Below, piece after piece: positions 17,025 through 62,375 of a stretch of DNA of 64,000 nucleotides (within the stretch, counting starts at the first letter, position 1; every line of letters begins with the position of its first letter). The stretch is taken from positions 62,001 to 126,000 of IMG/VR virus record IMGVR_UViG_3300027985_000918; one strand, 5' to 3'. The notes beneath the pieces are model-generated. The model did no database searches, had not been told where the DNA came from, and worked only from the letters and a program-made list of their open reading frames with translations. The position numbers were made by a program, and so were the translations under genes.

Positions 17025-17250
17025 CGGATCGTCCTCTGGGGAGAAAACCCCGCTGGAATAGGGCTCGGGGAGTCGTTTTTGGGGGGGATGGGCACATCGC
17101 TACCCCCAAAGCAGACGCCCCCTGTGAGAGAAACTACCCTTCTCAGCGTTGATCCGAACCCTGTTGCCTTCGACAATGTCATTTTGGGTGCAGATTCAAT
17201 CCCCCGTCTGGAGGGCTGGCGGGGACCCGATCACCTTTTTTAAGCGGTTC

Positions 17251-17430
17251 TGGCACGGAGCTTGCACACACCCACCACCCCAGGTGGACACCCCGAGTCA
17301 CGGGGGGTGTGCAAGCTCCGTGCCACCCTTCAACAGGTAACCCAGGGCTTGCACCCCCACCCCCCTCAGGGTACACCCCAAGTATTGGTGGAGTGTGCAA
17401 GCCCTGGGCCACCCTTCAACAGGTAACCCA
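17251..17430. repeat. two long hairpins separated by a 23-bp direct repeat
   Basis: 19-bp perfect IR 17251-17269/17307-17325; 14-bp perfect IR 17341-17354/17395-17408; GCCACCCTTCAACAGGTAACCCA at 17322 and 17408. Confidence 0.85.
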
Positions 17431-17551
17431 CCAAAAGTTGTGCCAAGCTACTCTGTCCCGCAACTTGTTCCGTAGTACCTACTTGCGGAGCCCCTGAAGT
17501 TACCTCCCCCGGCGCTCCCAAGAACCCGTGGGGGGGCGCCGGGGGAGAGGC

Positions 17552-18232
17552 TCAGCTCCCGCTGGTCGGCAGGGGTACCGTCCTCGTGGGGTCCCACACC
17601 GTCACGCCGAGCCATTCCGCCGCCTCGTACCAGGCTGCCAGCTCGGCGGGGTGAAGGTCGCCGTACAGGTACACGGTCACGTCGAGGTCGGAGACGTCTT
17701 GCAAGACGCTCATGCAGGCCTCCGCACACAAGGTGTGCGGCACGCCGTAGGCCCCCGTGCTGAGGGCAGGCACGGCCAGGCTCTTGCAGCCCAAGAGCTG
17801 GGCCATGGTGACTGCCCCGCTGTAGCACGAGTACAGGGCGTCGACCACGTCGTCCTCGTCCTCGGTGACGCTCTCTCCCACACGCAGCACTTCCTCCCGC
17901 AGAGGGCTCATGATGGGCCCCACGGTGTTGAGGACCCAGCCCACGCTGAGCCCCGTGCCGGTGGCCGGTACCGGGCGCACCTGGCCTTGGGGGCAGCGGA
18001 GGGTCACGTACCTTTCTGATAGGGGTCCCTCGGGCAGGTTGTGGCTGCTTTCCCGATAGGGGTGCCGCACGCCAATCACCTCTTCACACCGCTTCCGAAG
18101 GATTGCTCCAGCCTTGCGGTGGATGGCTCCGTCGACCCCTCCTCCCCCCAGCATCTGAGGGTTGGCGGCGTTCAGCAGAGCGTCCCCCTTGAACTCGGAA
18201 ATGTCCCCAAGGACGATGGTCATGGCACTCAT
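17552..18232 (-). CDS. macrodomain protein (ADP-ribose hydrolase, YmdB/MacroD-like)
   Basis: GDISEFKGDALLNAANPQMLGGGGVDGAIHRKAG, VLNTVGP, SLAVPALSTGAYG; motif at 18346-18372. Confidence 0.9.
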   Translation of the reverse strand: MSAMTIVLGDISEFKGDALLNAANPQMLGGGGVDGAIHRKAGAILRKRCEEVIGVRHPYRESSHNLPEGPLSERYVTLRCPQGQVRPVPATGTGLSVGWVLNTVGPIMSPLREEVLRVGESVTEDEDDVVDALYSCYSGAVTMAQLLGCKSLAVPALSTGAYGVPHTLCAEACMSVLQDVSDLDVTVYLYGDLHPAELAAWYEAAEWLGVTVWDPTRTVPLPTSGS

Positions 18233-18386
18233 ACAGGACCTCCAGGTCAATGCGGTACCGGATATACTGGGGAGTAGGGGACTGTTACCCCCTTTCCGGC
18301 AGCCTTGGGAAGAGGCACCGCTGGTCTCTGAGCCTTGCGACAAGCCTACTGGCGAAGAGTGAGGGGGTTACCTCCCCCAAGAACGA

Positions 18387-18423
18387 CAACCCCCGCTCTG
18401 AGGCGATCCCAGAGCGGGGGTTG
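18387..18423 (-). terminator. hairpin terminator closing candidate ncRNA
   Basis: CAACCCCCGCTCTG-loop-CAGAGCGGGGGTTG. Confidence 0.7.
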
Positions 18424-19157
18424 AAGGGTGTCCGGCGTAGCAGGTTGAACGACGAAGGAGGACACAACGCCGGGGCACCAGCGGACTTAGGTAGCTTCTT
18501 GACACCTTGAGGGAGAGCACGCCAGGCCACTCAGGGAACCTTTTCCGACTTCTTCGGATCCTGAGTCAACCCGTCCGCCTTGGCTTCGGGGGACTGCGCT
18601 GCGGTGGTCCTCGGTTTCCCGAGATCCCCCTTGTGGGGGTCCCCACCGTCTCGACCCAGCTCCGGGAGCTACCCGTATGCCTCTTGTCGTCCGTCGGCTC
18701 CATGTACCCCTGCCTCCTGCCCTCTCAGGCAGAGGCTCCAGGGTGTAGGTTAAGATGGCTCAGAGGGGGCTTCAAAAGCCCACTCTGCCCCGCTTCAGAC
18801 TTCCCTTCTGCTTGCGGGGACCGTCCGGTCGTGGTCTATGCTAGGTTGTGGCTTGGCTGACGTCGCCCACCTCTACCCGTGGGGCTCTGTAGGGCTCTCC
18901 AGTTCACCGCTCGTCACGGATCCCTAGGACTGGTCCCGGGAGGGGTCAGCTCCCGTCCCCGGTTACTGGCCGGTGGACCTGGCTCTTTGGTTCAAGCCAC
19001 CCTACATTGTGTTCAGTCTTCCGGCTGCTCCTGGGGGTCTCAGCTTTCGCTCTCCCAGGCCCTGCTCTGCCTTCTTATGAAGGCAGTCCAGACAAGCCTG
19101 CCGTGCTCTCTCTCAAGCTGTCAAAGAGTGTGTCGGGGGTCTGTTCCCCTTCCACGC
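18387..19157 (-). ncRNA. candidate large structured ncRNA (~750 nt)
   Basis: Own motif at 19163-19189, terminator at 18387-18423, no credible ORF, 26/29-bp terminal pairing, internal hairpins. Confidence 0.6.
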
Positions 19158-19205
19158 TATAGCTACTCGAACCCGGGGGTGTTGTTACCACCCCACTAGC
19201 ACTTT

Positions 19206-19865
19206 TCAGCCGGCTTGGGAGGTCAATCGAAGCCGGTTGGGGGTCACCGCCTTGGCCCTCCAGTGCTTGTCCCCCACGGGAACGTGGTTGGCTCGGACGA
19301 ACTTGGCCACCTTGCGAGGGAACTCGGCGTACCGGAAGGACTCTGCCACCCGGACCACATAGCCCTCCTGCTCACCTCCGAGCCGGCTCACTCCCGAGAA
19401 ACACGCCTTCACGGCGTCTTCGTCCCAGGGGCCCTCGTACAGGGCTGGGGCGGTCTCCAGCCCCAGAAGGGCAGCCCACTCCATGGTCTCTTCCCAGGAC
19501 AGGCAGCGGTCCTCTTCGTCGTACATGGCGAACACGTAGAAGTAGCTGCCCAGAGCATCGTAGTGGATGCTGTGCTGGGCGAAGAGGTTCTCGCCGCAGA
19601 CCCGCCACCCCTTAGGGAGGTCGGGCGCTACGCTAGCTGCCAGCGCTCTTACCCAGTTCTGGCTCTCATGGGCCCGACCATCCACGGAACGGGCATGCAG
19701 GTACCCGTCTGGGTAGATGGTGGTGTTCTCTCCGTCCAGTTTCTCGGTCACCAGGACACGCTCGCCCTGGAAGTGTTCCACGTCCGAGAGGGTCTTGTCG
19801 TCGTCAGTAGCCCCAGGGGACCACGGAAGGTGGAACGTGCGGGGGTACTTGGTTCGAGGTTCCAT
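19206..19865 (-). CDS. ATP-dependent RNA ligase family protein
   Basis: KYPRTFHLPWSPG, VTEKLDGENTT (KxDG motif I), GENLFA, EGYVVR, KFVR; motif at 19899-19924. Confidence 0.9.
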   Translation of the reverse strand: MEPRTKYPRTFHLPWSPGATDDDKTLSDVEHFQGERVLVTEKLDGENTTIYPDGYLHARSVDGRAHESQNWVRALAASVAPDLPKGWRVCGENLFAQHSIHYDALGSYFYVFAMYDEEDRCLSWEETMEWAALLGLETAPALYEGPWDEDAVKACFSGVSRLGGEQEGYVVRVAESFRYAEFPRKVAKFVRANHVPVGDKHWRAKAVTPNRLRLTSQAG

Positions 19866-19939
19866 GACACACCTACCAGTTAGGATCGTTCCCCGCACCT
19901 ACTAATGACTCCCCTGCTGTTACCACCCGCCAAGTAGGA

Positions 19940-19965
19940 GGTAACCCCAGCCCCTTGGCGAGTAG
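19940..19965 (+). promoter_or_regulatory. phage promoter-like motif
   Basis: GGTAAC-N15-AGTAG, back to back with 19899-19924. Confidence 0.7.
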
Positions 19966-20057
19966 GGGGAGTCGATAGCAACGAGGACCCCCCCACACGG
20001 CGGGATCCGAACACCACATCTGCCAAGGAGAAGAAGCATGCTGAAGTGAACCCGCAA

Positions 20058-20094
20058 GCCGTCCCGGCCCCCTCCGTCTACAGGCCGGGACGGC
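20058..20094 (+). terminator. hairpin terminator
   Basis: GCCGTCCCGGCC-loop-GGCCGGGACGGC followed by CCTTTG. Confidence 0.6.
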
Positions 20095-20194
20095 CCTTTG
20101 GGCCGGGTAACCTCCGACGTCTGTAGGTGAGGAGTCGGGTCCAGCCGCCAGGCTACCCCCGTTGGGATGGCCTTCCCTGCTCCTTACGCTCCAC

Positions 20195-20773
20195 CTACTG
20201 GTCAGGGGACAGGCGGTTACCTCGAAAATTGGGGGTAACACCCCCACACATGGCCAGTAGCCACCCCGTAAGGACCACCCCACCCCCCACCCCCGGCGGA
20301 TGCCGCCCCTTGCACCCTACCTACTTGTCAAGAGGGGCCTTGTTACCTTGAAAACTGGGGGTAACACCCCCACACATGGCCAGTAGCTACCCCGTAAGGA
20401 CCACTCCGAAGGCGGGGAGGGGCGGCATCCGCCCCTTGCACCCTATCTACTTGTCAAGAGGGGCCTTGTTACCTCGAAAATTGGGGGTAACAACCCCGCC
20501 CCTGCCGAGTAGTCTAGGAGTAAGGGGCGCCCCATAGGGAAACCGATGCGCCGCCCCCCATCCTGCCCCTTGCATTCCCTCTACTTGTCAAGGGGCAGGT
20601 GGTTACCTCGAAAATTGGGGGTAACACCCCCACACATGGCCAGTAGATACCCCGTAAGGACCACCCACGAAGGACCATCTACCCCGCACCCACTCCCTAC
20701 GCCCTATCTACTGGTCAATGAACAGGCTGTTACCTCGAAGATAGAGGGTAACACGGGTACCTCCGGCGAGTAG
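20195..20773. repeat. five tandem ~126-bp units, each with a 66-bp symmetric double promoter-like core
   Basis: CTACT-N16-GTTACC-N12-GGTAAC-N16-AGTAG starting at 20195, 20321, 20447, 20581, 20708. Confidence 0.9.
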
Positions 20774-20913
20774 ACCAGACGTAAGGAGCGTTCACCCCTT
20801 CGACTGCTGAGAGCGGGGTAACTTCGACCGGCAGATGAGTAGGTGTTTCGTAAGGAGTGACCTTGTGCTTTTCCTATTGGGGAGGGAGGAACCCCCCTCC
20901 CTGAGGGCCCCAG

Positions 20914-21195
20914 CTACACCCAGAGCACGTCCCCCCACCCTACCTGGTCCGCAGGCACACCGAAGGTCTCCGTGGCCTCCTGGCGGGCGTCACGACCCGC
21001 CACGAAGTGCCCCAGCACATGCTCGTCCACCAGCACATCCCCAGGTACCGTGGTCAGGGCGAAACCCGTCAGCACGTCCCTCCCCATGAAGGGAGCGCCG
21101 TACTCAGGGACTACCAGACTCTCACCTCGCTTGTGGACAGGGCGGATGTACGCCCGGCGAGGGGCTGCGGCTCCGTCATCGAAGATGTCCATCAT
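20914..21195 (-). CDS. hypothetical protein
   Basis: 93 aa, AAGGAGG RBS, motif at 21218-21243. Confidence 0.75.
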   Translation of the reverse strand: MMDIFDDGAAAPRRAYIRPVHKRGESLVVPEYGAPFMGRDVLTGFALTTVPGDVLVDEHVLGHFVAGRDARQEATETFGVPADQVGWGDVLWV

Positions 21196-21244: not shown

Positions 21245-21610
21245 AACTTCGACCCCCACAACTCGAAACTTTGCCCTTCCGAAACTTTCAAGCCGAAACT
21301 TTCATCAAAGTTTCGGCAACTTGGCGGAAGTTTCGAGCTGGGGAGGTAACTAAGGCCTCTTGCCAAGTAGACACGGGGAACTTTGGAGAACCGCCACTAT
21401 GAAGGTCCCCAAGCCCGTTCCGGGATACCCGCTCACCTTGGAGTGCGGAGGCCCCCACCGATTCGAGTGGGGGCCTGGGGAAGCATGAACTTCGGCACCT
21501 AGAAGCCCTTTGAAAGTTTCAAAGGGCGCCCTAACGCCAAACTTTGAGTGTAGAAGTGCTCTTGAAAGTTTCGAGGACACTTCGGCACGCAAACTTTCGC
21601 AACTTTTCTG
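21245..21610. repeat. clusters of AAAGTTTC/GAAACTTT motifs
   Basis: Repeated in both orientations at 21245-21335 and 21490-21610. Confidence 0.75.
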
Positions 21611-21673
21611 CTTGACAGCGGGGAAGCCACCCCCCATGGTACGGGGGCTGCTACCAACCGACGGGGGGCGAAC

Positions 21674-22546
21674 ATGCAGCAGATGGACCAGTTGGCAAGG
21701 CTCCTCATTCTCGAAGGTACGGCGGCTGTGGAGCCGTACAGTTGGGTCAAGGGCTCCGCTCATGACCTGGAGTGTGCTCGCATCCGGCTGGAAGGGCAGC
21801 CCGACGATTCGTGGTTCTCCGAGAAGGACTCAGGGATGTATGCCCTGCTAATGGCCCGGGTGCAGCGGGAACTCAACCGCTCCCGCATCCTGCACGTCAC
21901 TGCCGAGGACATTCTCCAGCAGGCCATGAGTGGGCTCCTGTCGGACGGGAGCCTCGGGAAGCACCGCTTCCACGCCGTGGGAGTCATCGCCAGGGAGAAC
22001 ATTCTCCACGGTGTGGAGACCCCCGCCAGGTTGGCCTCGGGGACCCTCGGGTCCTGGCTCCACCGGATGGCCATCAACACCATCAAGAAGAAGGACGCTG
22101 CCTTCTCCCTCGATGCTATGGTGGATTCCCACCCCGACTGGGGCTTCGACTCCCTCACTCCCGTACAGGGAGAGAAGGACAACGTCGTGATCCTCGTCGA
22201 GTGCATGGCCGGGGACACCCCCCTGTCTGTCCAGCTCCGGGGGCTCATGTGGCTCGCCATCACCAAGCGCTTCCGGACCCAAGCCCAAGCGCTTGGACTC
22301 CGCATCATGACGGCCTGGTTCCAGGAGATCTGCAACGGAAGGCTGCTCACCCCAGGGCTCGACTGGGCCAAAAGAGCCGAGCTGCCCCTCACCACCGAGG
22401 AAGACAAGGTGAGGGCGAAGGTCCAGACCTGGCGGACGTGGGAGAAGGCGGCTCCCGTGATTCGAGAAGCCGTGCAGGGGGACCCCGATGTGGCGTCCTT
22501 CGTGGACCTCCGCCTCACCTACGAGGCTGAGGTCCACCGTCACTAG
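21674..22546 (+). CDS. sigma-70/ECF region-2-like protein (no clear region-4 HTH)
   Basis: AEDILQQAMSGLL...LGSWLHRMAINTIKKK matches ECF region 2 pattern. Confidence 0.5.
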   Translation: MQQMDQLARLLILEGTAAVEPYSWVKGSAHDLECARIRLEGQPDDSWFSEKDSGMYALLMARVQRELNRSRILHVTAEDILQQAMSGLLSDGSLGKHRFHAVGVIARENILHGVETPARLASGTLGSWLHRMAINTIKKKDAAFSLDAMVDSHPDWGFDSLTPVQGEKDNVVILVECMAGDTPLSVQLRGLMWLAITKRFRTQAQALGLRIMTAWFQEICNGRLLTPGLDWAKRAELPLTTEEDKVRAKVQTWRTWEKAAPVIREAVQGDPDVASFVDLRLTYEAEVHRH

Positions 22547-22570
22547 GGCCAACTGGTCGCCCACTGCAAG

Positions 22571-22688
22571 AAACTTCCAAAGTTTCGACTTGAAAGTTTC
22601 GGGGGAGCGAAGTTTCGACTTGTGAGGGTCGAAGTTTCGACTTGAAAGTTTCGGGGGAGCAAAGTTTCGACTTGTGAGGGTCGAAGTT
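22571..22688. repeat. tandem AAGTTTCG array
   Basis: About 8 copies, incl. duplicated ~44-bp block, abutting motif at 22690-22715. Confidence 0.85.
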
Positions 22689-22744
22689 AGGTAACAGAGG
22701 GGGAGTGGCGAGTAGGTCCTTCAGAACGGAAGGAGGACACCACA

Positions 22745-23020
22745 ATGAGCAGCACCATCATGGCCATCACGTGCGGACGCATGGGCTCTCGCATGGCAAA
22801 CGTCAAGAGGGGGAGAAGGACCCTGAGCTTCCCCATCTACAGCGTGAAGCTCTACGCCCTCCGGGAGAGGGCTGACGGAGTAAAGACCTGGCGTTTTGTC
22901 CGGCACCTGTCGGACGGGCACACCGTGTTCAGCACGGTGGAACGTCAAGCGGAACAAGAAGCCCTGCTGAAGGGGCTCAGCTTCGTTCCCAACCTCATCC
23001 ACGGGGCCAGGGCCTCATAG
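22745..23020 (+). CDS. hypothetical protein
   Basis: 91 aa, AAGGAGG RBS, motif at 22690-22715. Confidence 0.75.
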   Translation: MSSTIMAITCGRMGSRMANVKRGRRTLSFPIYSVKLYALRERADGVKTWRFVRHLSDGHTVFSTVERQAEQEALLKGLSFVPNLIHGARAS

Positions 23021-24136
23021 CTCCCCCTGCCACTGCCGGGCCTGTTCCCTCAGGTAGGTCAGGCCCCGGCTCACCGACGCTCTCGAAACCCCCAACTGCT
23101 CTGCGATCTCCGACCGAGTCATCCCAGCCGACACCATCGGGAGAATGGCTACCGCCATCTTCCCATCCTGCGTGTGGGACTTCTCCGACTCCCCCAGCCA
23201 CACCGTCAACGCCTCTTGGGCCTCCGCCATACCCTGGGCTTCCTCTGCCCCTGAGGGCTCCGCAGGGATGGTCTGACTGGAGGCCACGTCCATCAACCCA
23301 TAATCCCCGTCACCCCCATACCCCATCACCCCAGGGGACTCGAACTCCTTCCGGCGCTTCTGCTTCCGGTGGTAGTTGCTCAGGACCCCCTGACACACCA
23401 TGTGGACGTAGTGCCCGAAGGAGGACTTGCGGGCATCCCAAGGGCAGTGACCCTCATTCCGGGCCAGCAGACCTTTGTAGACCTCTTGGAGCACATCATC
23501 CGGGTCGTAACGGGCGGAGAAGATCCACTGCCCGAACCCAGCGAACAGCAACTTGGCGACCTCCTCCGCCCTGTTCACCAGATCGATCCCTAGCTCCGGG
23601 TTGTCGTCCAGTACCCCCTCGGCTACCACCAAGGCGGCCTGAGCGGCGTTCACCGATTCGGGGATCACGGTAACCAGAGCCTGCTCGCCAGTAGGCTCCA
23701 CGTAAGCCCCGCCCCTCTTACGGGGGGACTCCGTACCACGAGGGGTAACGCTGGCCGACTTCCGAGTAGCTGGGGTGTTGGGAGTCTGAGCCACACCGAA
23801 CTCGATCATGAGGTCGAGTCCAGGCTCACCCTTCGAGGCTGCCGGAGCGTGGCGGCCAATGCGGAAGTACCGCTCGAAGGTCCAATGACGATCGTGCCCG
23901 GTCAGGGCTAGGAGGAGCTGCCTCTTGGACGTGTAGACGACATGATCCCCCTCGGGAAGCACCAACACCAGGTGCTGGGGTGACCTAACCACCACCTCGT
24001 GGCTTCCGTCCATGTGACGGGCCCGAAGGCGAAGGGTCTCGCTGCTGTCAAGCGAGATCGACGCCGGGGTTCGCTTTTCTTCGGCGGAGGGTTCGATGTC
24101 AGTCTGGGGGCGGGTTTGATTTTTCGAGGGTTGCAA
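23015..24136 (-). CDS. ECF-like RNA polymerase sigma factor with N-terminal extension
   Basis: YDPDDVLQEVYKGLL...FGHYVHMVCQGVLSNYHRKQKRR (region 2), MTRSEIAEQLGVSRASVSRGLTYLRE (region 4 HTH); TTG 24136 follows GGAGGGAGG. Confidence 0.8.
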   Translation of the reverse strand: MQPSKNQTRPQTDIEPSAEEKRTPASISLDSSETLRLRARHMDGSHEVVVRSPQHLVLVLPEGDHVVYTSKRQLLLALTGHDRHWTFERYFRIGRHAPAASKGEPGLDLMIEFGVAQTPNTPATRKSASVTPRGTESPRKRGGAYVEPTGEQALVTVIPESVNAAQAALVVAEGVLDDNPELGIDLVNRAEEVAKLLFAGFGQWIFSARYDPDDVLQEVYKGLLARNEGHCPWDARKSSFGHYVHMVCQGVLSNYHRKQKRRKEFESPGVMGYGGDGDYGLMDVASSQTIPAEPSGAEEAQGMAEAQEALTVWLGESEKSHTQDGKMAVAILPMVSAGMTRSEIAEQLGVSRASVSRGLTYLREQARQWQGEL

Positions 24137-24189
24137 GTTACGTCCTCCCTCCGTACATCGGGATGTGCCGGAAGTTTCATCGTCCCGCA

Positions 24190-24218
24190 CTTCTACCACT
24201 TTCAGCCCCCAAGTGCAA
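24190..24218 (-). promoter_or_regulatory. possible host sigma70-type promoter of the sigma gene
   Basis: TTGCAC-N17-TAGAAG on minus strand. Confidence 0.4.
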
Positions 24219-24493
24219 GGAAACAGTAGGGCATCCCGCCCCCAAACGGGCGGGTCAACCCCCCTTCATAGCCCTAAAGTTCTGCAGGGGGAGTTTGGCT
24301 AAGGCCAGAACCGAAACTTTGGGGTGAACTTCGATGGTCTCAAAGTTTGCTGTGGGCTTCCCTGCCCCCTCGGAGAGGGGTGCCCTTCCCTCTCCAACCC
24401 CCCTTATCGAAGCAGCCCTCCAACTGGCTGTTGGCCCCCTTCAAGAGTGAGGAGTCAGCCGGCCGACCGAGTCCCGCCGTGTTGAAGAATCCA

Positions 24494-24519
24494 GGTAACC
24501 CGGACTCTCTTATGAGTAG
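24494..24519 (+). promoter_or_regulatory. phage promoter-like motif heading the paralog array
   Basis: GGTAAC-N15-AGTAG. Confidence 0.75.
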
Positions 24520-24564
24520 GCCTTTCAGGACGAAACCTCTTGTAAGTCCCAGAGGAGGCAACCC

Positions 24565-24950
24565 ATGAACACGAGTTAAGAACGGCATCGTGAGGCATTG
24601 AGAGGATGGGCCTGCTGTCGAGTGGTACCTCAACGGGAATCGGCATGAGTGAGGCGCCCCAGCCATTGAGGGGCCTAAACGGACTCAATGGCTGGGGCTG
24701 TGGGACGGACTCAATGGCTGGGGCTGTGGGATCGATCCCACACCGAGGTGATTCGGGAGGCAGCCATGAACATCTGGTAGGTCCAACACCAAAGGTTATA
24801 AAATCCCTGCTGGGCCGTTCGGGCCGTTGAAGGTGGTGGTTCTGAGGCCAGCTCCACCGTGAAGGCCCCCGGTTACGAGGGTGCCGACAGCTTCAAAGCG
24901 TGGTGGTCCCCTGGGGTCTGCACCCGAATCGAGGAGAAATCTGGCCGATG
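24565..24950 (+). pseudogene. decayed HREDGPA-repeat gene remnant(s)
   Basis: Fragments equivalent to EDGPAVEW, IDPTPEVIREAA, QLHREG, CTRIEE with stops/frameshifts; 26-bp tandem duplication 24679-24730. Confidence 0.75.
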
Positions 24951-29118: not shown

Positions 29119-29144
29119 GGTAACCCTAACCCCCTGCTGAGTAG
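29119..29144 (+). promoter_or_regulatory. internal phage promoter-like motif (duplicate at 39306-39331)
   Basis: GGTAACCCTAACCCCCTGCTGAGTAG, identical at both sites. Confidence 0.75.
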
Positions 29145-29209
29145 GCGTCTCAGAACGATGGCTCAGAGGAGCCAATAGGAAACGTCACTGAGCAAAAGGG
29201 GAATGTCAG

Positions 29210-29746
29210 ATGATCACCCGTAAAACGTTGGAAGGCCTGTGGGTTCACTCCGTACAGTGGGATCTCTTCGAGCAGTTCCTGGGTGATCGAGAAGGGGTCG
29301 AACCTACTCCGGATGTGATCCGGGAAGCCGCACTGTTCGGACTGGATGTTCAAGGGGGCCGGGATGCCGGCCTGTTCCAACTCCCCGATGGGCCGATCGT
29401 GTTCAAGGACGGTCACCGGGTGAACTACCTCAACGGTCAGATCCACTGCGAGGATGGCCCGGCCATCGTGTGGCCCGATGGCCACCAAGAGTGGTGGGTT
29501 CACGATGAACGTCATTGTGAGGATGGGCCGGCTATCCTGCGGCCTAACGGCGACCGGGAGTGGTGGGTCAACGGGCAGAAGGACCGAGCGGATGGTCCGG
29601 CCATCGAGCGTGCCAATGGCCGCAAGGAGTGGTGGGTCAACGGGGAGCGCATCAAGATCGAAGGGGCCGACTACAGCAAGGAATGGTGGTTTCACGGGAA
29701 GCCCCACCGTGAAAACCCCCCGGCCGTTATGATGGAAGAACAGTAG
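29210..29746 (+). CDS. HREDGPA-repeat protein 7 (divergent, HCEDG type)
   Basis: MITRKTLEGLWVHS N-domain, about 4 repeats. Confidence 0.9.
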   Translation: MITRKTLEGLWVHSVQWDLFEQFLGDREGVEPTPDVIREAALFGLDVQGGRDAGLFQLPDGPIVFKDGHRVNYLNGQIHCEDGPAIVWPDGHQEWWVHDERHCEDGPAILRPNGDREWWVNGQKDRADGPAIERANGRKEWWVNGERIKIEGADYSKEWWFHGKPHRENPPAVMMEEQ

Positions 29747-39206: not shown

Positions 39207-39395
39207 TGGTAATGCCAATCGCAACAGCCTCCCTCACTGAGGGGGAGGGGGAGCCCCCCCTTATCATGTGACTTATCAGTTTCTCCCCCAAGATGAAGAA
39301 TTCCGGGTAACCCTAACCCCCTGCTGAGTAGGCACCCCAGAACGATGGCTCAGAGGAGCCAATAAAAAACGGCACTGAGCAAAAAGGAATGTCAG

Positions 39396-39932
39396 ATGAT
39401 CACCCGTAAAACGTTGGAAGGCCTGTGGGTTCATTCCAGACAGTGGGATCTCTTCGAGCAGTTCCTGGGCGATCGAGAAGGGGTCGAACCTACTCCGGAT
39501 GTGATCCGGGAAGCCGCACTGTTCGGACTGGATGTTCAAGGGGCTCAGGACGCCGGGCTGCTGCAACTTCCCGATGGGCCGATCGTGTTCAAGGACGGTC
39601 ACCGGGTGAACTACCTCAACGGCCAGATCCACTGCGAGGATGGCCCGGCCATCGAATGGCCCGATGGCCACCAAGAGTGGTGGGTTCACGATGAACGTCA
39701 TTGTGAGGATGGGCCGGCTATCCTGCGGCCCAACGGCGACCGGGAGTGGTGGGTCAACGGGCAGAAGGACCGAGCGGATGGTCCGGCCATCGAGCGTGCC
39801 GATGGCCGCAAGGAGTGGTGGGTCAACGGGGAGCGCATCAAGATCGAGGGGGCCGACTACAGCAAGGAATGGTACCTCGAAGGGCCCCCCCACCGTGAAA
39901 ACTCCCCGGCTTTCATGCGGGGAGAACAGTAG
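39396..39932 (+). CDS. HREDGPA-repeat protein 19 (near-copy of protein 7)
   Basis: MITRKTLEGLWVHSRQ. Confidence 0.9.
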   Translation: MITRKTLEGLWVHSRQWDLFEQFLGDREGVEPTPDVIREAALFGLDVQGAQDAGLLQLPDGPIVFKDGHRVNYLNGQIHCEDGPAIEWPDGHQEWWVHDERHCEDGPAILRPNGDREWWVNGQKDRADGPAIERADGRKEWWVNGERIKIEGADYSKEWYLEGPPHRENSPAFMRGEQ

Positions 39933-56413: not shown

Positions 56414-57334
56414 ATGGGAAAGACACGTTCCCGCATCCAACTGGGTGACGCCAACCGTAAGCCCGAGAGAGTGAAACCGCCCGTTTCGCTGGCGGAGAAC
56501 CTCCGACCCCTCGTTGAGTTCAAGAAGTGGGGTCAGGTCCAGGTCAAGGCTATCGCCCCCTGCGGACCCGCCAAGAGCGGCTACAAGTGCGTTGCGTCCT
56601 GGAAGGTGCTGAACTCCAATGAGGACGAGCAGGCCTTCCTGGACGCCTGGGAGGCCATCGGGTTGGACCCCACCCGGTTGTTCCACGGAACCAAAGCCAC
56701 CAACGTGGCTTCGATCACCCAGCAAGGACTGGTGGCAGGCCGCCGGGGCTGCATGTTCGGCTCCGGGATCTACTTCGGAAAGATCAACAAGGCGTTGATG
56801 TACAGCAATGGAAGCGGCGATGCCCACTACGTGTTCGAGGCCGATGTCTTGCTGGGGAAAAGCAAGGTTGCCGATGCGCCCCACCCGTGGAACCTGAAGG
56901 CCTTGCGGAAGGAGGGGTACGACTCCATCCATGGCAAGTTGGGGAGGACGGTTAGCAGGGGAGGAACCCTCCGCAACGACGAGTGGGTGGTGTACTCCAG
57001 GGATCAGATCCTGCTGGATAAGCTCCACGAGTACCAGTACCTCTCGGGCGAGTTCTGGGTTCCTCCTCCCATCAAGGGGTCGTGCGGCCTGATTACCACC
57101 AAGGATGTCTACCTGGGCAAATCCGCCCGGGCATTCAGGGACGTGATCGAGAGGCAGATGTGTGGGAACGAAGGGTACACCCAGCTCATCTTGGAGGGCA
57201 ACAAGCGGGTATGGGCCTGCAACTCCTGCATCCAGAAGGGGAAGCTGCGGGTGGGCTCCAAGGTCACGGTGCGGATGTCGGGGAACGGGTGGAGGGAGCC
57301 AGAAAAGCAGTTCCGAGTAATCGGCCAGGAGTAG
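56414..57334 (+). CDS. PARP-like (H-Y-E) ADP-ribosyltransferase with Cys-rich C-terminus
   Basis: LFHGT, GCMFGSGIYFG, KALMYS, DVLLGK, GYDSI, NDEWVVY; motif at 56364-56390. Confidence 0.85.
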   Translation: MGKTRSRIQLGDANRKPERVKPPVSLAENLRPLVEFKKWGQVQVKAIAPCGPAKSGYKCVASWKVLNSNEDEQAFLDAWEAIGLDPTRLFHGTKATNVASITQQGLVAGRRGCMFGSGIYFGKINKALMYSNGSGDAHYVFEADVLLGKSKVADAPHPWNLKALRKEGYDSIHGKLGRTVSRGGTLRNDEWVVYSRDQILLDKLHEYQYLSGEFWVPPPIKGSCGLITTKDVYLGKSARAFRDVIERQMCGNEGYTQLILEGNKRVWACNSCIQKGKLRVGSKVTVRMSGNGWREPEKQFRVIGQE

Positions 57335-61394: not shown

Positions 61395-62375
61395 CTACCC
61401 GAAGAACTTGTCGGCGTCTTCGTACTGGAAACCACAGCGTTCTGCGAACGTCTGGTCGGTCTGCATGTCACCGACCACGATGACCTTGGAGGGGTCGAGA
61501 CGGTACCGTTCGAGGAACACGACTCCCATGCCGGGACAGGGCTTCCTCCAAAAAGACTGAGGCACTCCTGCCCTCTCGGGGGCGTAGGCCACGTCCATGT
61601 CAGGCTGGCCGAGCTGTTCCAGGGTCTCTTCGATGCACTCGATGACCGTGGACTCGGAAACGTACCTATAGTCGTTGGCCGGGCGGCTAGTCCCGGATTG
61701 GTTGGTAGCCCCCAGGAGGAGGTACCCCTGGGCCTTGAGGTCGGCCAGGCGGGACTTCCGGCCCGGCAGGATCTTCACGTCAGCCGGATGGCGGGGGTAG
61801 ATCTCCCCACTCCGAGTACCCCTTAGGGTGCCGTCGAGATCGAAGATCACGGCCTTGGCCGTGTACTCTGGGCCGAGCTTGATCTCGACATCGACTCTCT
61901 CGACGGAGTCGAACCCCTCATCCGTGGTGGGGGGCTCGAACCGCTTGAAGTAGGCGAACTGGGCGGCTGGGGGGAACATGCTGGGGTTCCCTTTGACTGC
62001 CGGGTCCTTGTAGTCGTCCGGCGTCAGCAGTCGGCCGTAGTGGCGGACCTGACGGAGGCTCGCCAGGAACTGGACCTGGCCGAGATCGGCATTCAGCCAG
62101 ATGACCCGGATGGGCAGGCCCAGTTCCTTGGCGATGGCGACCGCAGCCATCCTCGACTCCTTCGTGCCGAATGTGTTGTCGAGGACAAACTTGCGGTGTC
62201 CTTCCCCGTACTTCTCCCGTAGGGATTGGTAGATGGGGGCTCCGGCCATGCCCAGAGAACCACCGAGGCTGTCTCGGTTGAGACGGCAGTAGCCCTGCTC
62301 CACCAGGGACTTGCTGTAGGTGGTCTTCCCGCAGGCGGGAGGGCCCATAACGAGAACGATCTCACCATTGAACAT
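61395..62375 (-). CDS. polynucleotide kinase / HAD 3'-phosphatase (PNKP-like)
   Basis: GPPACGKTT, NRDSLG, VLDNT kinase; DLDGTL, TNQSG, RKPCPGM, VGD HAD-IIIA phosphatase. Confidence 0.85.
   Translation of the reverse strand: MFNGEIVLVMGPPACGKTTYSKSLVEQGYCRLNRDSLGGSLGMAGAPIYQSLREKYGEGHRKFVLDNTFGTKESRMAAVAIAKELGLPIRVIWLNADLGQVQFLASLRQVRHYGRLLTPDDYKDPAVKGNPSMFPPAAQFAYFKRFEPPTTDEGFDSVERVDVEIKLGPEYTAKAVIFDLDGTLRGTRSGEIYPRHPADVKILPGRKSRLADLKAQGYLLLGATNQSGTSRPANDYRYVSESTVIECIEETLEQLGQPDMDVAYAPERAGVPQSFWRKPCPGMGVVFLERYRLDPSKVIVVGDMQTDQTFAERCGFQYEDADKFFG

What the first reader, a model, noticed from the sequence alone, without database searches (positions are those of the whole stretch)
20195..20842. 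Five tandem symmetric double promoters with no genes: decoy, origin or entry region
Seen: five 66-bp cores CTACT-N16-GTTACC-N12-GGTAAC-N16-AGTAG at 126/126/134/127-bp periods, i.e. ten promoter motifs back to back. Right ends continue AGTAG-N6-CGTAAGGA in 4 of 5 units. The array lies where gene orientation flips from mainly minus (8-21 kb) to plus (21.3-58 kb), about 1-3 kb from two sigma-like genes. Inference: sigma/RNAP sponge or loading hub, transcription-primed replication origin, or source of short bidirectional RNAs.
Basis: partly seen in the sequence, partly recalled or inferred. Interest (0 to 1): 0.8.

Follow-up and report, generated by a model that had tools for sequence, protein, structure and literature searches.

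The report
Gene-less array of ten phage promoters
A 402-kb phage carries a 650-bp non-coding stretch of five tandem units, each holding two back-to-back copies of the phage's own promoter; the promoters look real, but the role of the gene-less array is unproven and it is absent from the closest known relative.

Summary
Window 20176-20793 holds five 126-134-bp units. Each has an exact core CTACT-N16-GTTACC-N12-GGTAAC-N16-AGTAG, and an eleventh promoter lies at 20817-20842.

- **Promoter class.** GGTAAC-N15/16-AGTAG occurs 32 times in the window against 0.04 expected. It matches gene orientation and usually sits 23-115 nt upstream of a ribosome-binding site and start codon.
- **Link to a sigma factor.** The motif recurs only in contigs whose sigma-like gene is at least 63% identical to the window's (23015-24136, minus strand).
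- **Conservation.** Across units the -35 and -10 columns are invariant (22/22), while the spacers between them have drifted (8/32 invariant).
- **No product found.** The array has no coding signal, no significant RNA fold, no Rfam match and no antisense target.
- **Geometry.** Start sites are about 81 bp apart within a pair and about 45 bp apart, face to face, between units. Inner polymerases would block each other. Hairpins bracket both ends.
- **Distribution.** There is one copy in the 402-kb genome and none in any other sequence examined.

Best reading: a tandemly amplified bidirectional promoter cassette that acts through polymerase binding and short, self-interfering transcription. A threshold-setting decoy role is an inference. 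Origin, small-RNA and neutral by-product readings remain open.

The parts
20195..20260 (.). Unit 1 core: leftward promoter (-10 at 20195-20199, -35 at 20216-20221) and rightward promoter (-35 at 20234-20239, -10 at 20256-20260), sharing a 12-bp A/T-containing centre
20321..20386 (.). Unit 2 core, same architecture
20447..20512 (.). Unit 3 core, same architecture
20581..20646 (.). Unit 4 core, same architecture
20708..20773 (.). Unit 5 core, same architecture
20261..20320 (.). Spacer 1-2. It holds the two facing start regions (CGTAAGGA on the plus strand, TGCAAGGGG on the minus strand), with inferred start sites about 45 bp apart. It is rich in G/C runs. Spacers 20387-20446, 20513-20580 and 20647-20707 are equivalent.
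20817..20842 (+). Eleventh promoter (N15 spacer), facing outward. Its start region, CGTAAGGAG, mirrors the outermost left arm.
   Evidence: (I4)
20058..20094 (.). Hairpin with a 12-bp G+C-rich stem, about 100 bp left of the array. It lies between the array and the RNA ligase promoter. It also ends the short plus-strand unit that starts at promoter 19940-19965.
   Evidence: (I10)
20877..20903 (.). G+C-rich hairpin between the array and the 3' end of the 93-aa gene (20914-21195, minus strand)
19899..19965 (.). A single back-to-back promoter pair (15 bp between the -35 elements) just left of the array. The leftward member drives the RNA ligase gene. It shows the unamplified form of the same design.
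23015..24136 (-). Sigma-like gene (373 aa), the presumed recognition factor for GGTAAC-N15/16-AGTAG
21674..22546 (+). Second possible sigma-like gene (290 aa, nearly an orphan), flanked by CGAAACTT boxes

Best explanation
The array is a tandem amplification (five copies) of a bidirectional promoter cassette. It provides ten binding and initiation sites for host RNA polymerase carrying the phage's ECF-like sigma factor.

Each 126-bp unit seats two polymerases back to back. They share an A/T-containing upstream tract, and their inferred start sites are about 81 bp apart. Neighbouring units place two promoters face to face, with start sites about 45 bp apart. Two bound polymerases, each covering roughly -50 to +20, therefore fit side by side but cannot clear each other.

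The inner eight promoters should thus give only very short or collision-truncated RNAs. The outward-facing end promoters run about 100 nt into G+C-rich hairpins. The element therefore probably acts through polymerase and sigma occupancy and local non-coding transcription, not through an encoded product.

The physiological role I think most likely is a cis-acting decoy or buffer. It would set a threshold for free sigma-polymerase in the dense early/middle region next to the sigma genes.

What is shown: the sites are real members of the promoter class, their promoter elements are selectively conserved, and the array is non-coding and lineage-specific. What is inferred: start-site positions, mutual interference, termination at the hairpins, and the buffering role.
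For: - **Promoter class.** There are 32 matches against 0.04 expected. Sites are on the strand of the genes they precede, and about 16 of the 22 non-array sites lie 23-115 nt upstream of a ribosome-binding site and start codon.
- **Link to the sigma clade.** The motif is present in L005, L006 and L007 (12, 3 and 4 sites), whose sigma is 63-71% identical. It occurs 0-1 times in each of 57 loci from huge-phage contigs whose sigma is 46% identical or less.
- **The protein is sigma-like.** Its profile matches sigma-H 3mzy at E = 2.7e-6. Foldseek hits 1-28 are sigma-factor entries, though the best E-value is only 3.9e-4 and TM-scores are low.
- **Selective conservation.** -35 and -10 columns are invariant in 22/22 cases against 8/32 for the N16 spacers (p = 1.3e-8). 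The start octamer is invariant in 10/16 columns against 1/12 for the six bases before it (p = 0.006).
- **Upstream A-tract.** The core centre matches the A-tract seen 3-5 nt upstream of the -35 in L005 promoters.
- **No alternative promoter or product.** No sigma-70-type promoter lies in 19-22 kb, and there is no coding signal.
- **No RNA product signal.** Spacer fold z-scores range from -2.2 to +1.2 with no shared structure. There is no Rfam match and no target longer than 12 nt.
- **Geometry.** Taken. The -50 to +20 footprint and 'sitting duck' interference between facing promoters are described in PMC3134472. Hairpins flank both ends.
- **Decoy precedent.** Repeated decoy sites sharpen dose-response in a synthetic yeast system (PMC3322331, abstract listed).
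- **Feedback on sigma.** Antisense promoters inside the sigma gene, conserved in three relatives, suggest that sigma level is tightly controlled here.
Against: - No transcription or binding data exist.
- The array promoters differ from the gene promoters. The spacer is N16 in 10/10 against 5/22 (p = 5e-5). A G follows AGTAG in 2/10 against 18/22 (p = 0.0015). They may therefore be weaker, or read by a different factor.
- Decoy capacity is only ten sites per genome copy. That is 31% of perfect sites in this window, but probably around 10% genome-wide (my extrapolation).
- The closest relative, with a sigma 69-71% identical, lacks the array at the matching junction. No other array was found in IMG/VR, JGI metagenome contigs, or the flanks of the sigma genes in 59 other loci from huge-phage contigs. 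Any function is therefore dispensable or recent.
- The hairpins lack clear U-tracts, so termination there is not assured.
Confidence: 0.4

Rival explanations
1. Neutral or nearly neutral by-product. Unequal recombination between repeated promoter cassettes in a hyperplastic, ORFan-rich region amplified an 'empty' bidirectional cassette. The sites may still bind polymerase, but the array has no selected function.
For: - The 15-25 kb region is packed with small genes that each have their own promoter copy: 25 of the 32 sites lie there.
- Gene content between the sigma and Macro genes differs from the closest relative, which lacks the array.
- The units are mosaics of arm variants.
- In T4-type phages, promoter plus stem-loop cassettes (PeSLs) drive this kind of shuffling (PMC2839356).
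Against: - The units have diverged to 69-89% identity, yet all 110 promoter-element bases remain perfect. That points to constraint rather than drift.
- Both arm families independently keep the N16 spacing and the YGYAAGG start, although their spacer sequences are unrelated.
Confidence: 0.2
2. Genes for short non-coding RNAs. Each promoter makes a small RNA starting GUAAGG or GCAAGG. Facing pairs give complementary RNAs of about 45 nt (double-stranded RNA), or RNAs with a 5'-terminal Shine-Dalgarno-like sequence, and these act in trans.
For: - The conserved start octamer YGYAAGGR is shared by all ten arms.
- This phage uses the same promoter class for gene-less units elsewhere. One is a transcript of about 776 nt at 18380-19155 (minus strand) with a terminator and a fold z-score of -4.1. 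Another is a unit of about 130 nt at 19965-20100.
- Hairpins bound the array.
Against: - Beyond the first 8-10 nt the transcripts are not conserved between units.
- Their folds are no better than shuffled sequence.
- There is no Rfam match and no complementary target in the 64-kb window.
- Facing promoters 45 bp apart are a poor design for making a defined product.
Confidence: 0.17
3. Transcription-activated bidirectional replication origin. Divergent transcripts from each core open the DNA or prime leading strands in both directions, for example through R-loops in the G/C-run-rich spacers.
For: - The array sits at a divergence of gene orientation, within about 4 kb of the best breakpoint for the strand-independent GC-skew component.
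- It is the window's maximum for G/C runs of 4 or more: 20% of bases against 6.6+-2.8%.
- From my own knowledge, gene-less or tandem phage promoters serve replication in T7 (phi1.1A/1.1B, phiOL, phiOR) and T4 (oriF, oriG).
- Baculovirus homologous regions (hrs), which are repeat units containing imperfect palindromes, act as both enhancer and origin (PMC4535591, abstract listed).
Against: - The skew breakpoint fits 24-25 kb better than 20.5 kb: residual reduction is 29-44% against 15-34%.
- There is no AT-rich unwinding element; only 6-7 A/T bases lie in each core.
- No replication genes were identified near the array among the proteins scanned.
- The array is absent from the matching site in the closest relative.
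- Whole-genome skew could not be examined.
Confidence: 0.13
4. A binding array for a dimeric DNA-binding protein other than RNA polymerase, such as a repressor, a partition or centromere protein, or a packaging protein. The protein would recognise the GTTACC-N12-GGTAAC inverted repeat.
For: - Each core has dyad symmetry.
- The period of 126 bp is about 12 helical turns.
- A separate cluster of palindromic boxes (CGAAACTT) lies nearby, and the core centre (CGAAAATT) resembles it weakly.
Against: - Every conserved column is explained by promoter parts: upstream tract, -35, -10 and start region.
- The symmetry extends to the -10 and start regions, 16-30 bp outside the -35 elements. That fits two polymerases, not one dimer.
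- Exact CGAAACTT boxes are confined to 21264-24312 and absent from the array.
Confidence: 0.05

Closest known systems
PeSL cassettes (promoter-early plus stem-loop) of T4-type phages (PMC2839356, PMC4122927)
   Same: Both are short repeated regulatory cassettes containing a promoter with an A/T-rich upstream tract and G/C-run stem-loops. Both are concentrated in hyperplastic regions of small ORFan genes. In T4-type phages they are recombination substrates that reshuffle gene content between close relatives.
   Different: PeSLs are unidirectional sigma-70-type promoters that flank ORFs and are scattered through the genome. Here the promoters depend on a phage sigma factor, are paired back to back, are tandemly arrayed, and have no ORFs between them.
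Facing promoters with transcriptional interference: coliphage 186 pR/pL and Streptomyces scbA/scbR (PMC3134472)
   Same: Two promoters face each other with start sites a few tens of bp apart (53 bp in scbA/scbR, about 45 bp here). Bound polymerases therefore collide or act as 'sitting ducks', which yields truncated RNAs.
   Different: The known cases are single pairs that form a genetic switch between two genes. Here there are four consecutive facing pairs of look-alike promoters, no genes, and no identified regulator.
Gene-less or tandem phage-polymerase promoters used for replication or packaging: T7 phi1.1A/1.1B, phiOL and phiOR; T4 oriF and oriG
   Same: Phage-specific promoters that exist for a DNA-level function rather than to express a downstream gene.
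   Different: Those are one or two unidirectional promoters beside an AT-rich unwinding region, read by a phage polymerase or under MotA control. Here there are ten symmetric promoters in G/C-run-rich DNA.
Baculovirus homologous regions, hrs (PMC4535591)
   Same: Tandem units (64 bp there, 126 bp here), each containing an imperfect palindrome. They are non-coding and act in cis by binding the transcription machinery.
   Different: Hrs belong to a eukaryotic virus and occur in several copies per genome. They bind a dimeric activator rather than polymerase, and their enhancer and origin activities have been shown experimentally.
Repeated decoy binding sites (PMC3322331) and iteron arrays of plasmid and phage origins
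   Same: Tandem repeats of a protein-binding site that can titrate a factor or nucleate a complex.
   Different: Iterons are about 20 bp long, directly repeated, and bound by an initiator encoded nearby. The decoy precedent is synthetic and in yeast. Here each site is a complete promoter.

Membership tests
Promoters of an alternative (ECF-type) sigma factor | Two conserved elements at fixed spacing, over-represented and oriented with the genes | tested here: met
   GGTAAC-N15/16-AGTAG occurs 32 times against 0.04 expected, and its strand follows gene orientation.
Promoters of an alternative (ECF-type) sigma factor | Located a short distance upstream of ribosome-binding sites and start codons | tested here: met
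   Met for about 16 of the 22 non-array sites, at 23-115 nt. Not met for the ten array sites, which is the anomaly under study.
Promoters of an alternative (ECF-type) sigma factor | A cognate sigma factor is encoded, and the motif co-varies with it | tested here: met
   The 373-aa protein's profile matches sigma-H 3mzy, and its model matches sigma structures weakly. The motif occurs only with sigma orthologues of 63% identity or more. Which of the two candidate proteins reads the motif is unknown.
Promoters of an alternative (ECF-type) sigma factor | Mapped transcription start sites and holoenzyme binding | not testable with these tools
   No RNA or ChIP data are available. Start sites were inferred from the conserved Y-R step 7-8 nt after the -10.
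Iteron-type or transcription-activated replication origin | An AT-rich unwinding element next to the repeats | tested here: not met
   The array is 60% G+C, the longest A/T stretch is 6-7 bp, and the array is the window's maximum for G/C runs.
Iteron-type or transcription-activated replication origin | Coincides with the switch in replication-related strand skew | tested here: inconclusive
   The best breakpoint is at 24-25 kb. A breakpoint at 20.5 kb fits worse but is not excluded. Only 64 of the 402 kb were visible.
Iteron-type or transcription-activated replication origin | Conserved position in related genomes | tested here: not met
   The matching junction in L005 has one ordinary divergent promoter pair and no array.
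PeSL-like mobile regulatory cassettes | Promoter plus stem-loop modules that flank ORFan genes and mark recombination breakpoints between relatives | tested here: inconclusive
   The promoter-dense ORFan region and the differing gene content in the relative fit. However, only spacers 1-2 and 2-3 have a clear stem-loop, no ORFs are flanked, and no breakpoints could be mapped.
Tandem small-RNA genes | A conserved transcribed sequence or structure with defined 3' ends | tested here: not met
   Only the first 8-10 nt are conserved. Fold z-scores range from -2.2 to +1.2. There is no Rfam match.
Protein-coding repeat gene | An open frame with the genome's codon-position G+C pattern | tested here: not met
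   GC2 is 0.58-0.69 and GC3 is 0.56-0.68, against 0.44 and 0.76 in genes. The frames are broken by the 134- and 127-bp periods.

The most novel reading that the evidence does not exclude
The array is a purpose-built polymerase trap or initiation platform. Ten sigma-holoenzymes lock face to face on 650 bp. This either sets a copy-number-dependent threshold for the phage's transcription programme, or uses the divergent short transcripts of each core to open and prime a bidirectional replication origin. Either would be a cis element made only of promoters, a kind not described for phages.
Probability: 0.2. Interest if true: 0.8.

Novelty: new variant of a known kind. Interest (0 to 1): 0.55.

Why it matters
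Huge phages encode many sigma-like proteins, but their promoters and regulatory logic are almost unknown. This window gives three things:
- a clean promoter consensus tied to one sigma clade;
- a dense regulatory region next to the sigma gene(s);
- an element made of nothing but promoters.

If the array titrates or stores sigma-polymerase, or primes replication, it would be a new type of cis-regulatory DNA. It would also be a simple, portable part for controlling an orthogonal sigma factor. If it is only a recombination by-product, it still shows how promoter cassettes amplify in hyperplastic regions of phage genomes.

Tried and rejected
- **Coding repeat gene: rejected.** The codon-position G+C pattern is wrong and the frames are broken.
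- **Known RNA family: none found.** There were no matches at the gathering threshold over the whole window. An E-value search of 16.9-21.7 kb gave only a chance miRNA hit elsewhere. There are no tRNAs.
- **Structured small RNAs: not supported.** Eleven candidate transcripts fold no better than shuffled sequence.
- **Antisense targets: none.** No match longer than 12 nt in the window.
- **Host sigma-70 promoters or classical terminators in the array: essentially none.** The scan found no promoter. It found one weak terminator-like site, to the right of the array at 20849-20867.
- **Operator array for the CGAAACTT-box regulator: rejected.** Exact boxes are confined to 21264-24312. The core centre is better explained as a shared upstream A/T tract.
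- **Search for the same architecture elsewhere.**
  - IMG/VR with three spacing variants returned only the source genome, present as two identical 402,383-bp contigs.
  - JGI metagenome contigs gave nothing, plus one unrelated AT-rich palindrome, L068.
  - The array-type promoter subclass occurs nowhere else in the 402-kb genome except at 18346-18372.
  - Tandem Repeats Finder found no comparable non-coding array within 10 kb of the sigma gene in 59 other loci from huge-phage contigs.
- **DNA similarity to GenBank phages.** Only the RNA ligase gene matches Caulobacter jumbo phages.
- **Homologues of the 290-aa protein.** None were found by the word-based search.
- **Assembly artefact: unlikely.** The units are only 69-89% identical to each other, and the sequence is identical in contigs from two samples.

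Full report
**1. Observation.** Window 20176-20793 contains five tandem units with start-to-start spacing of 126, 126, 134 and 127 bp. They are 69-89% identical to unit 1. Each unit holds an exact 66-bp core, CTACT-N16-GTTACC-N12-GGTAAC-N16-AGTAG, at 20195, 20321, 20447, 20581 and 20708.

The left arms carry the same feature in mirror image (AGTAG-N6-YGYAAGG, or CGTAGGG in unit 5), so all ten arms share it. An eleventh promoter at 20817-20842 faces outward. Its start region is an inverted copy of the outermost left arm (I4).

**2. The motif is a real promoter class.** GGTAAC-N14-18-AGTAG occurs 32 times in the 64-kb window against 0.04 expected by shuffling.
- The 22 sites outside the array are on the strand of the genes they precede. 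About 16 of them lie 23-115 nt upstream of a Shine-Dalgarno sequence and start codon.
- No sigma-70-type promoter is detectable in 19-22 kb.

**3. Source and the sigma link.** The window is part of a 402,383-bp IMG/VR contig, at positions 62001-126000. The contig is present identically in two samples. Its DNA resembles GenBank phages only at an RNA ligase gene shared with Caulobacter jumbo phages.

A 373-aa protein is encoded at 23015-24136 on the minus strand.
- It has borderline ECF-sigma and HTH Pfam matches.
- It belongs to a family of more than 590 proteins found on contigs of up to 438 kb, several of which their source labels 'sigma24'.
- As a profile it matches sigma-H 3mzy at E = 2.7e-6.
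- Its AlphaFold model (mean pLDDT 77.5) gives sigma-factor entries as Foldseek hits 1-28. The E-values are weak (best 3.9e-4) and the TM-scores low.

The promoter motif is found in the three contigs whose sigma is 63-71% identical: L005 has 12 sites, L006 has 3 and L007 has 4. It occurs 0-1 times in each of 57 loci whose sigma homologue is 46% identical or less. Motif and sigma clade therefore travel together.

The second 'sigma-like' gene (21674-22546) is nearly an orphan. One homologue was found, in L007. There were no hits against solved structures or in the word-based protein search. The structural leads toward ECF sigma factors are weak.

**4. Anatomy of a unit.** The pattern of conservation across units is that of promoters.
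- All 22 columns of -35 and -10 are invariant within the two arm families.
- Only 8 of the 32 columns of the N16 spacers are invariant (Fisher p = 1.3e-8).
- The start octamer is invariant in 10 of 16 columns, against 1 of 12 for the six bases before it (p = 0.006).

The 12-bp centre (consensus TCGAAAATTGGG) provides an A-tract upstream of one -35 and a T-tract upstream of the other. This resembles the GAAAA tract 3-5 nt upstream of the -35 in L005 promoters.

The array promoters form a subclass.
- The spacer is N16 in 10/10, against 5/22 elsewhere (p = 5e-5).
- The base after AGTAG is G in 2/10, against 18/22 (p = 0.0015).
- The start region reads YGYAAGGR rather than CAGAAC-like, in the same register.

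Both N16 spacing and a non-G base occur at gene-linked promoters, so the subclass lies within the working range. In the whole 402-kb genome the combination of N16 and YGYAAGG occurs only in the array and at 18346-18372, upstream of the Macro-domain gene.

**5. No product.**
- ORFs inside the array lack the genome's codon-position G+C pattern.
- Candidate transcripts from all arms fold no better than shuffled controls and share no structure.
- There is no Rfam match and no tRNA.
- The spacers have no complement longer than 12 nt elsewhere in the window.

**6. Geometry (inference).** I take the conserved purine 7-8 nt after the -10 as the start site.
- Divergent start sites within a core are then about 81 bp apart.
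- Facing start sites of neighbouring units are about 45 bp apart, and 81 + 45 = 126.
- With a polymerase footprint of about -50 to +20 (PMC3134472), ten holoenzymes can occupy the array side by side. The eight inner ones cannot clear their promoters without colliding. This is the 'sitting duck' interference described for coliphage 186 and scbA/scbR, repeated four times.
- The outward-facing end promoters run into G+C-rich hairpins at 20058-20094 and 20877-20903 before the next gene promoters. These hairpins lack clear U-tracts.
- The array is also the window's extreme for G/C runs of 4 or more: 20% of bases against 6.6+-2.8%. I cannot explain this.

**7. Comparative evidence.**
- The double-promoter architecture was not found in any other IMG/VR contig or in any JGI metagenome contig under several spacing variants. 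The one extra hit, L068, is an unrelated AT-rich palindrome.
- In the closest relative, L005 (sigma 69-71% identical, Macro gene syntenic), the matching divergent junction holds one ordinary promoter pair about 100 bp apart and no repeats.
- Tandem Repeats Finder found no comparable non-coding array within 10 kb of the sigma gene in 59 other loci from huge-phage contigs.
- The array is therefore lineage-specific. It is old enough for its spacers to have diverged, yet its promoter elements are intact.

**8. Origin test.** I regressed per-gene GC skew on gene strand plus a side term.
- There is a strand-independent component, but its best breakpoint is 24-25 kb. That is the other divergent junction, between the sigma gene and the repeat-protein operon.
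- Residual reduction there is 29-44%, against 15-34% with the breakpoint at the array.
- Only three predicted genes of 60 aa or more separate the two positions, and only 16% of the genome is visible. The test is therefore inconclusive and leans against the array.
- There is no AT-rich unwinding element, and no replication genes were identified near the array among the proteins scanned.

**9. Interpretation.** The most economical account is a bidirectional promoter cassette that was amplified five-fold by unequal recombination in a promoter-dense, ORFan-rich region. An unamplified version survives next door at 19899-19965. This parallels the PeSL cassettes of T4-type phages (PMC2839356).

The array has since been kept as a set of working sigma-polymerase sites. 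It acts through occupancy and short, self-interfering transcription. My preferred role is a decoy or buffer that sharpens the response to sigma level; decoy repeats do this in a synthetic yeast system (PMC3322331). This fits a locus that also carries conserved antisense promoters inside the sigma gene. It remains an inference, at about 0.4 confidence.

The rivals are a neutral by-product (0.2), short RNA genes (0.17), a transcription-activated origin (0.13) and a site array for another dimeric protein (0.05).

**10. Novelty.** Promoter clusters, facing promoters, gene-less phage promoters and palindrome-bearing viral repeat regions are all known. A tandem array made only of back-to-back promoters of a phage sigma factor did not turn up in eight full-text literature searches. 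I rate it a new variant of a known kind, of moderate interest. It would be of high interest if the trap or origin reading proves true.

Noticed in passing
window 18380-19189 (minus strand): A gene-less unit of about 776 nt. It has a GGTAAC-N16-AGTAG promoter (19163-19189) and a classical hairpin plus T-rich terminator (about 18384-18425). Its fold z-score is -4.1 against shuffles, and it has no Rfam match. It is a candidate large structured non-coding RNA of a huge phage.
   Followed up: partly
window 21264-21335, 21500-21610, 22580-22669, 24171-24319: Clusters of the near-palindromic box CGAAACTT (TTGAAAGTTTCAA type). All 13 exact octamers in the window lie within 21264-24312. They sit upstream of promoters 21218(-), 21345(+) and 22690(+) and upstream of the sigma gene. 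This looks like the operator set of an unidentified regulator of the sigma locus.
   Followed up: partly
window 23669-23694 and 23744-23769 (+); L005 9837-9862, L006 2671-2697, L007 724-749: Promoters of the same class lie antisense inside the sigma-like gene. The position is conserved in three relatives. This suggests negative feedback on sigma through antisense transcription.
   Followed up: partly
window 19940-20100 (+): A short unit of about 130 nt. It consists of a promoter, a strong ribosome-binding site, a three-codon mini-ORF (ATG CTG AAG TGA at 20038-20049), and a hairpin with a 12-bp stem followed by CCCTTTGGG.
   Followed up: no
window 17025-17551: A gene-less region downstream of promoter 17479-17504(-). 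It contains an 86-bp repeat in two copies, each with an internal inverted repeat (17260-17430).
   Followed up: no
window 24900-48000 (+): About 28 consecutive paralogous genes built from 69-bp (23-aa) MORN-like repeats, with weak Pfam DUF6745 hits. There is also a duplicated promoter plus 178-aa gene at 29119-29746 and 39306-39932. L005 has a different repeat-gene block with a 78-bp period (Pfam DUF7666).
   Followed up: no
window 17552-18232(-), 19206-19898(-), 56414-57334(+), 61395-62150(-): Four genes with Pfam matches: Macro domain, RNA ligase, PARP-like ADP-ribosyltransferase and polynucleotide kinase 3'-phosphatase. The set suggests RNA repair and ADP-ribosylation functions, possibly counter-defence. 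The first three have a sigma-class promoter site upstream; none was found upstream of the phosphatase gene.
   Followed up: no
window 24137-24947: An 810-bp gene-poor divergent junction between the sigma gene and the repeat-protein operon. It is the best-fitting position for the strand-independent GC-skew switch. It contains a perfect 26-bp direct repeat in two copies (24679-24731) and fragments of the MORN-like repeat.
   Followed up: partly
window 19850-20950: The ten 650-bp windows richest in G/C homopolymer runs of 4 or more in the whole 64 kb all overlap the array and its flanks. I have no explanation.
   Followed up: partly
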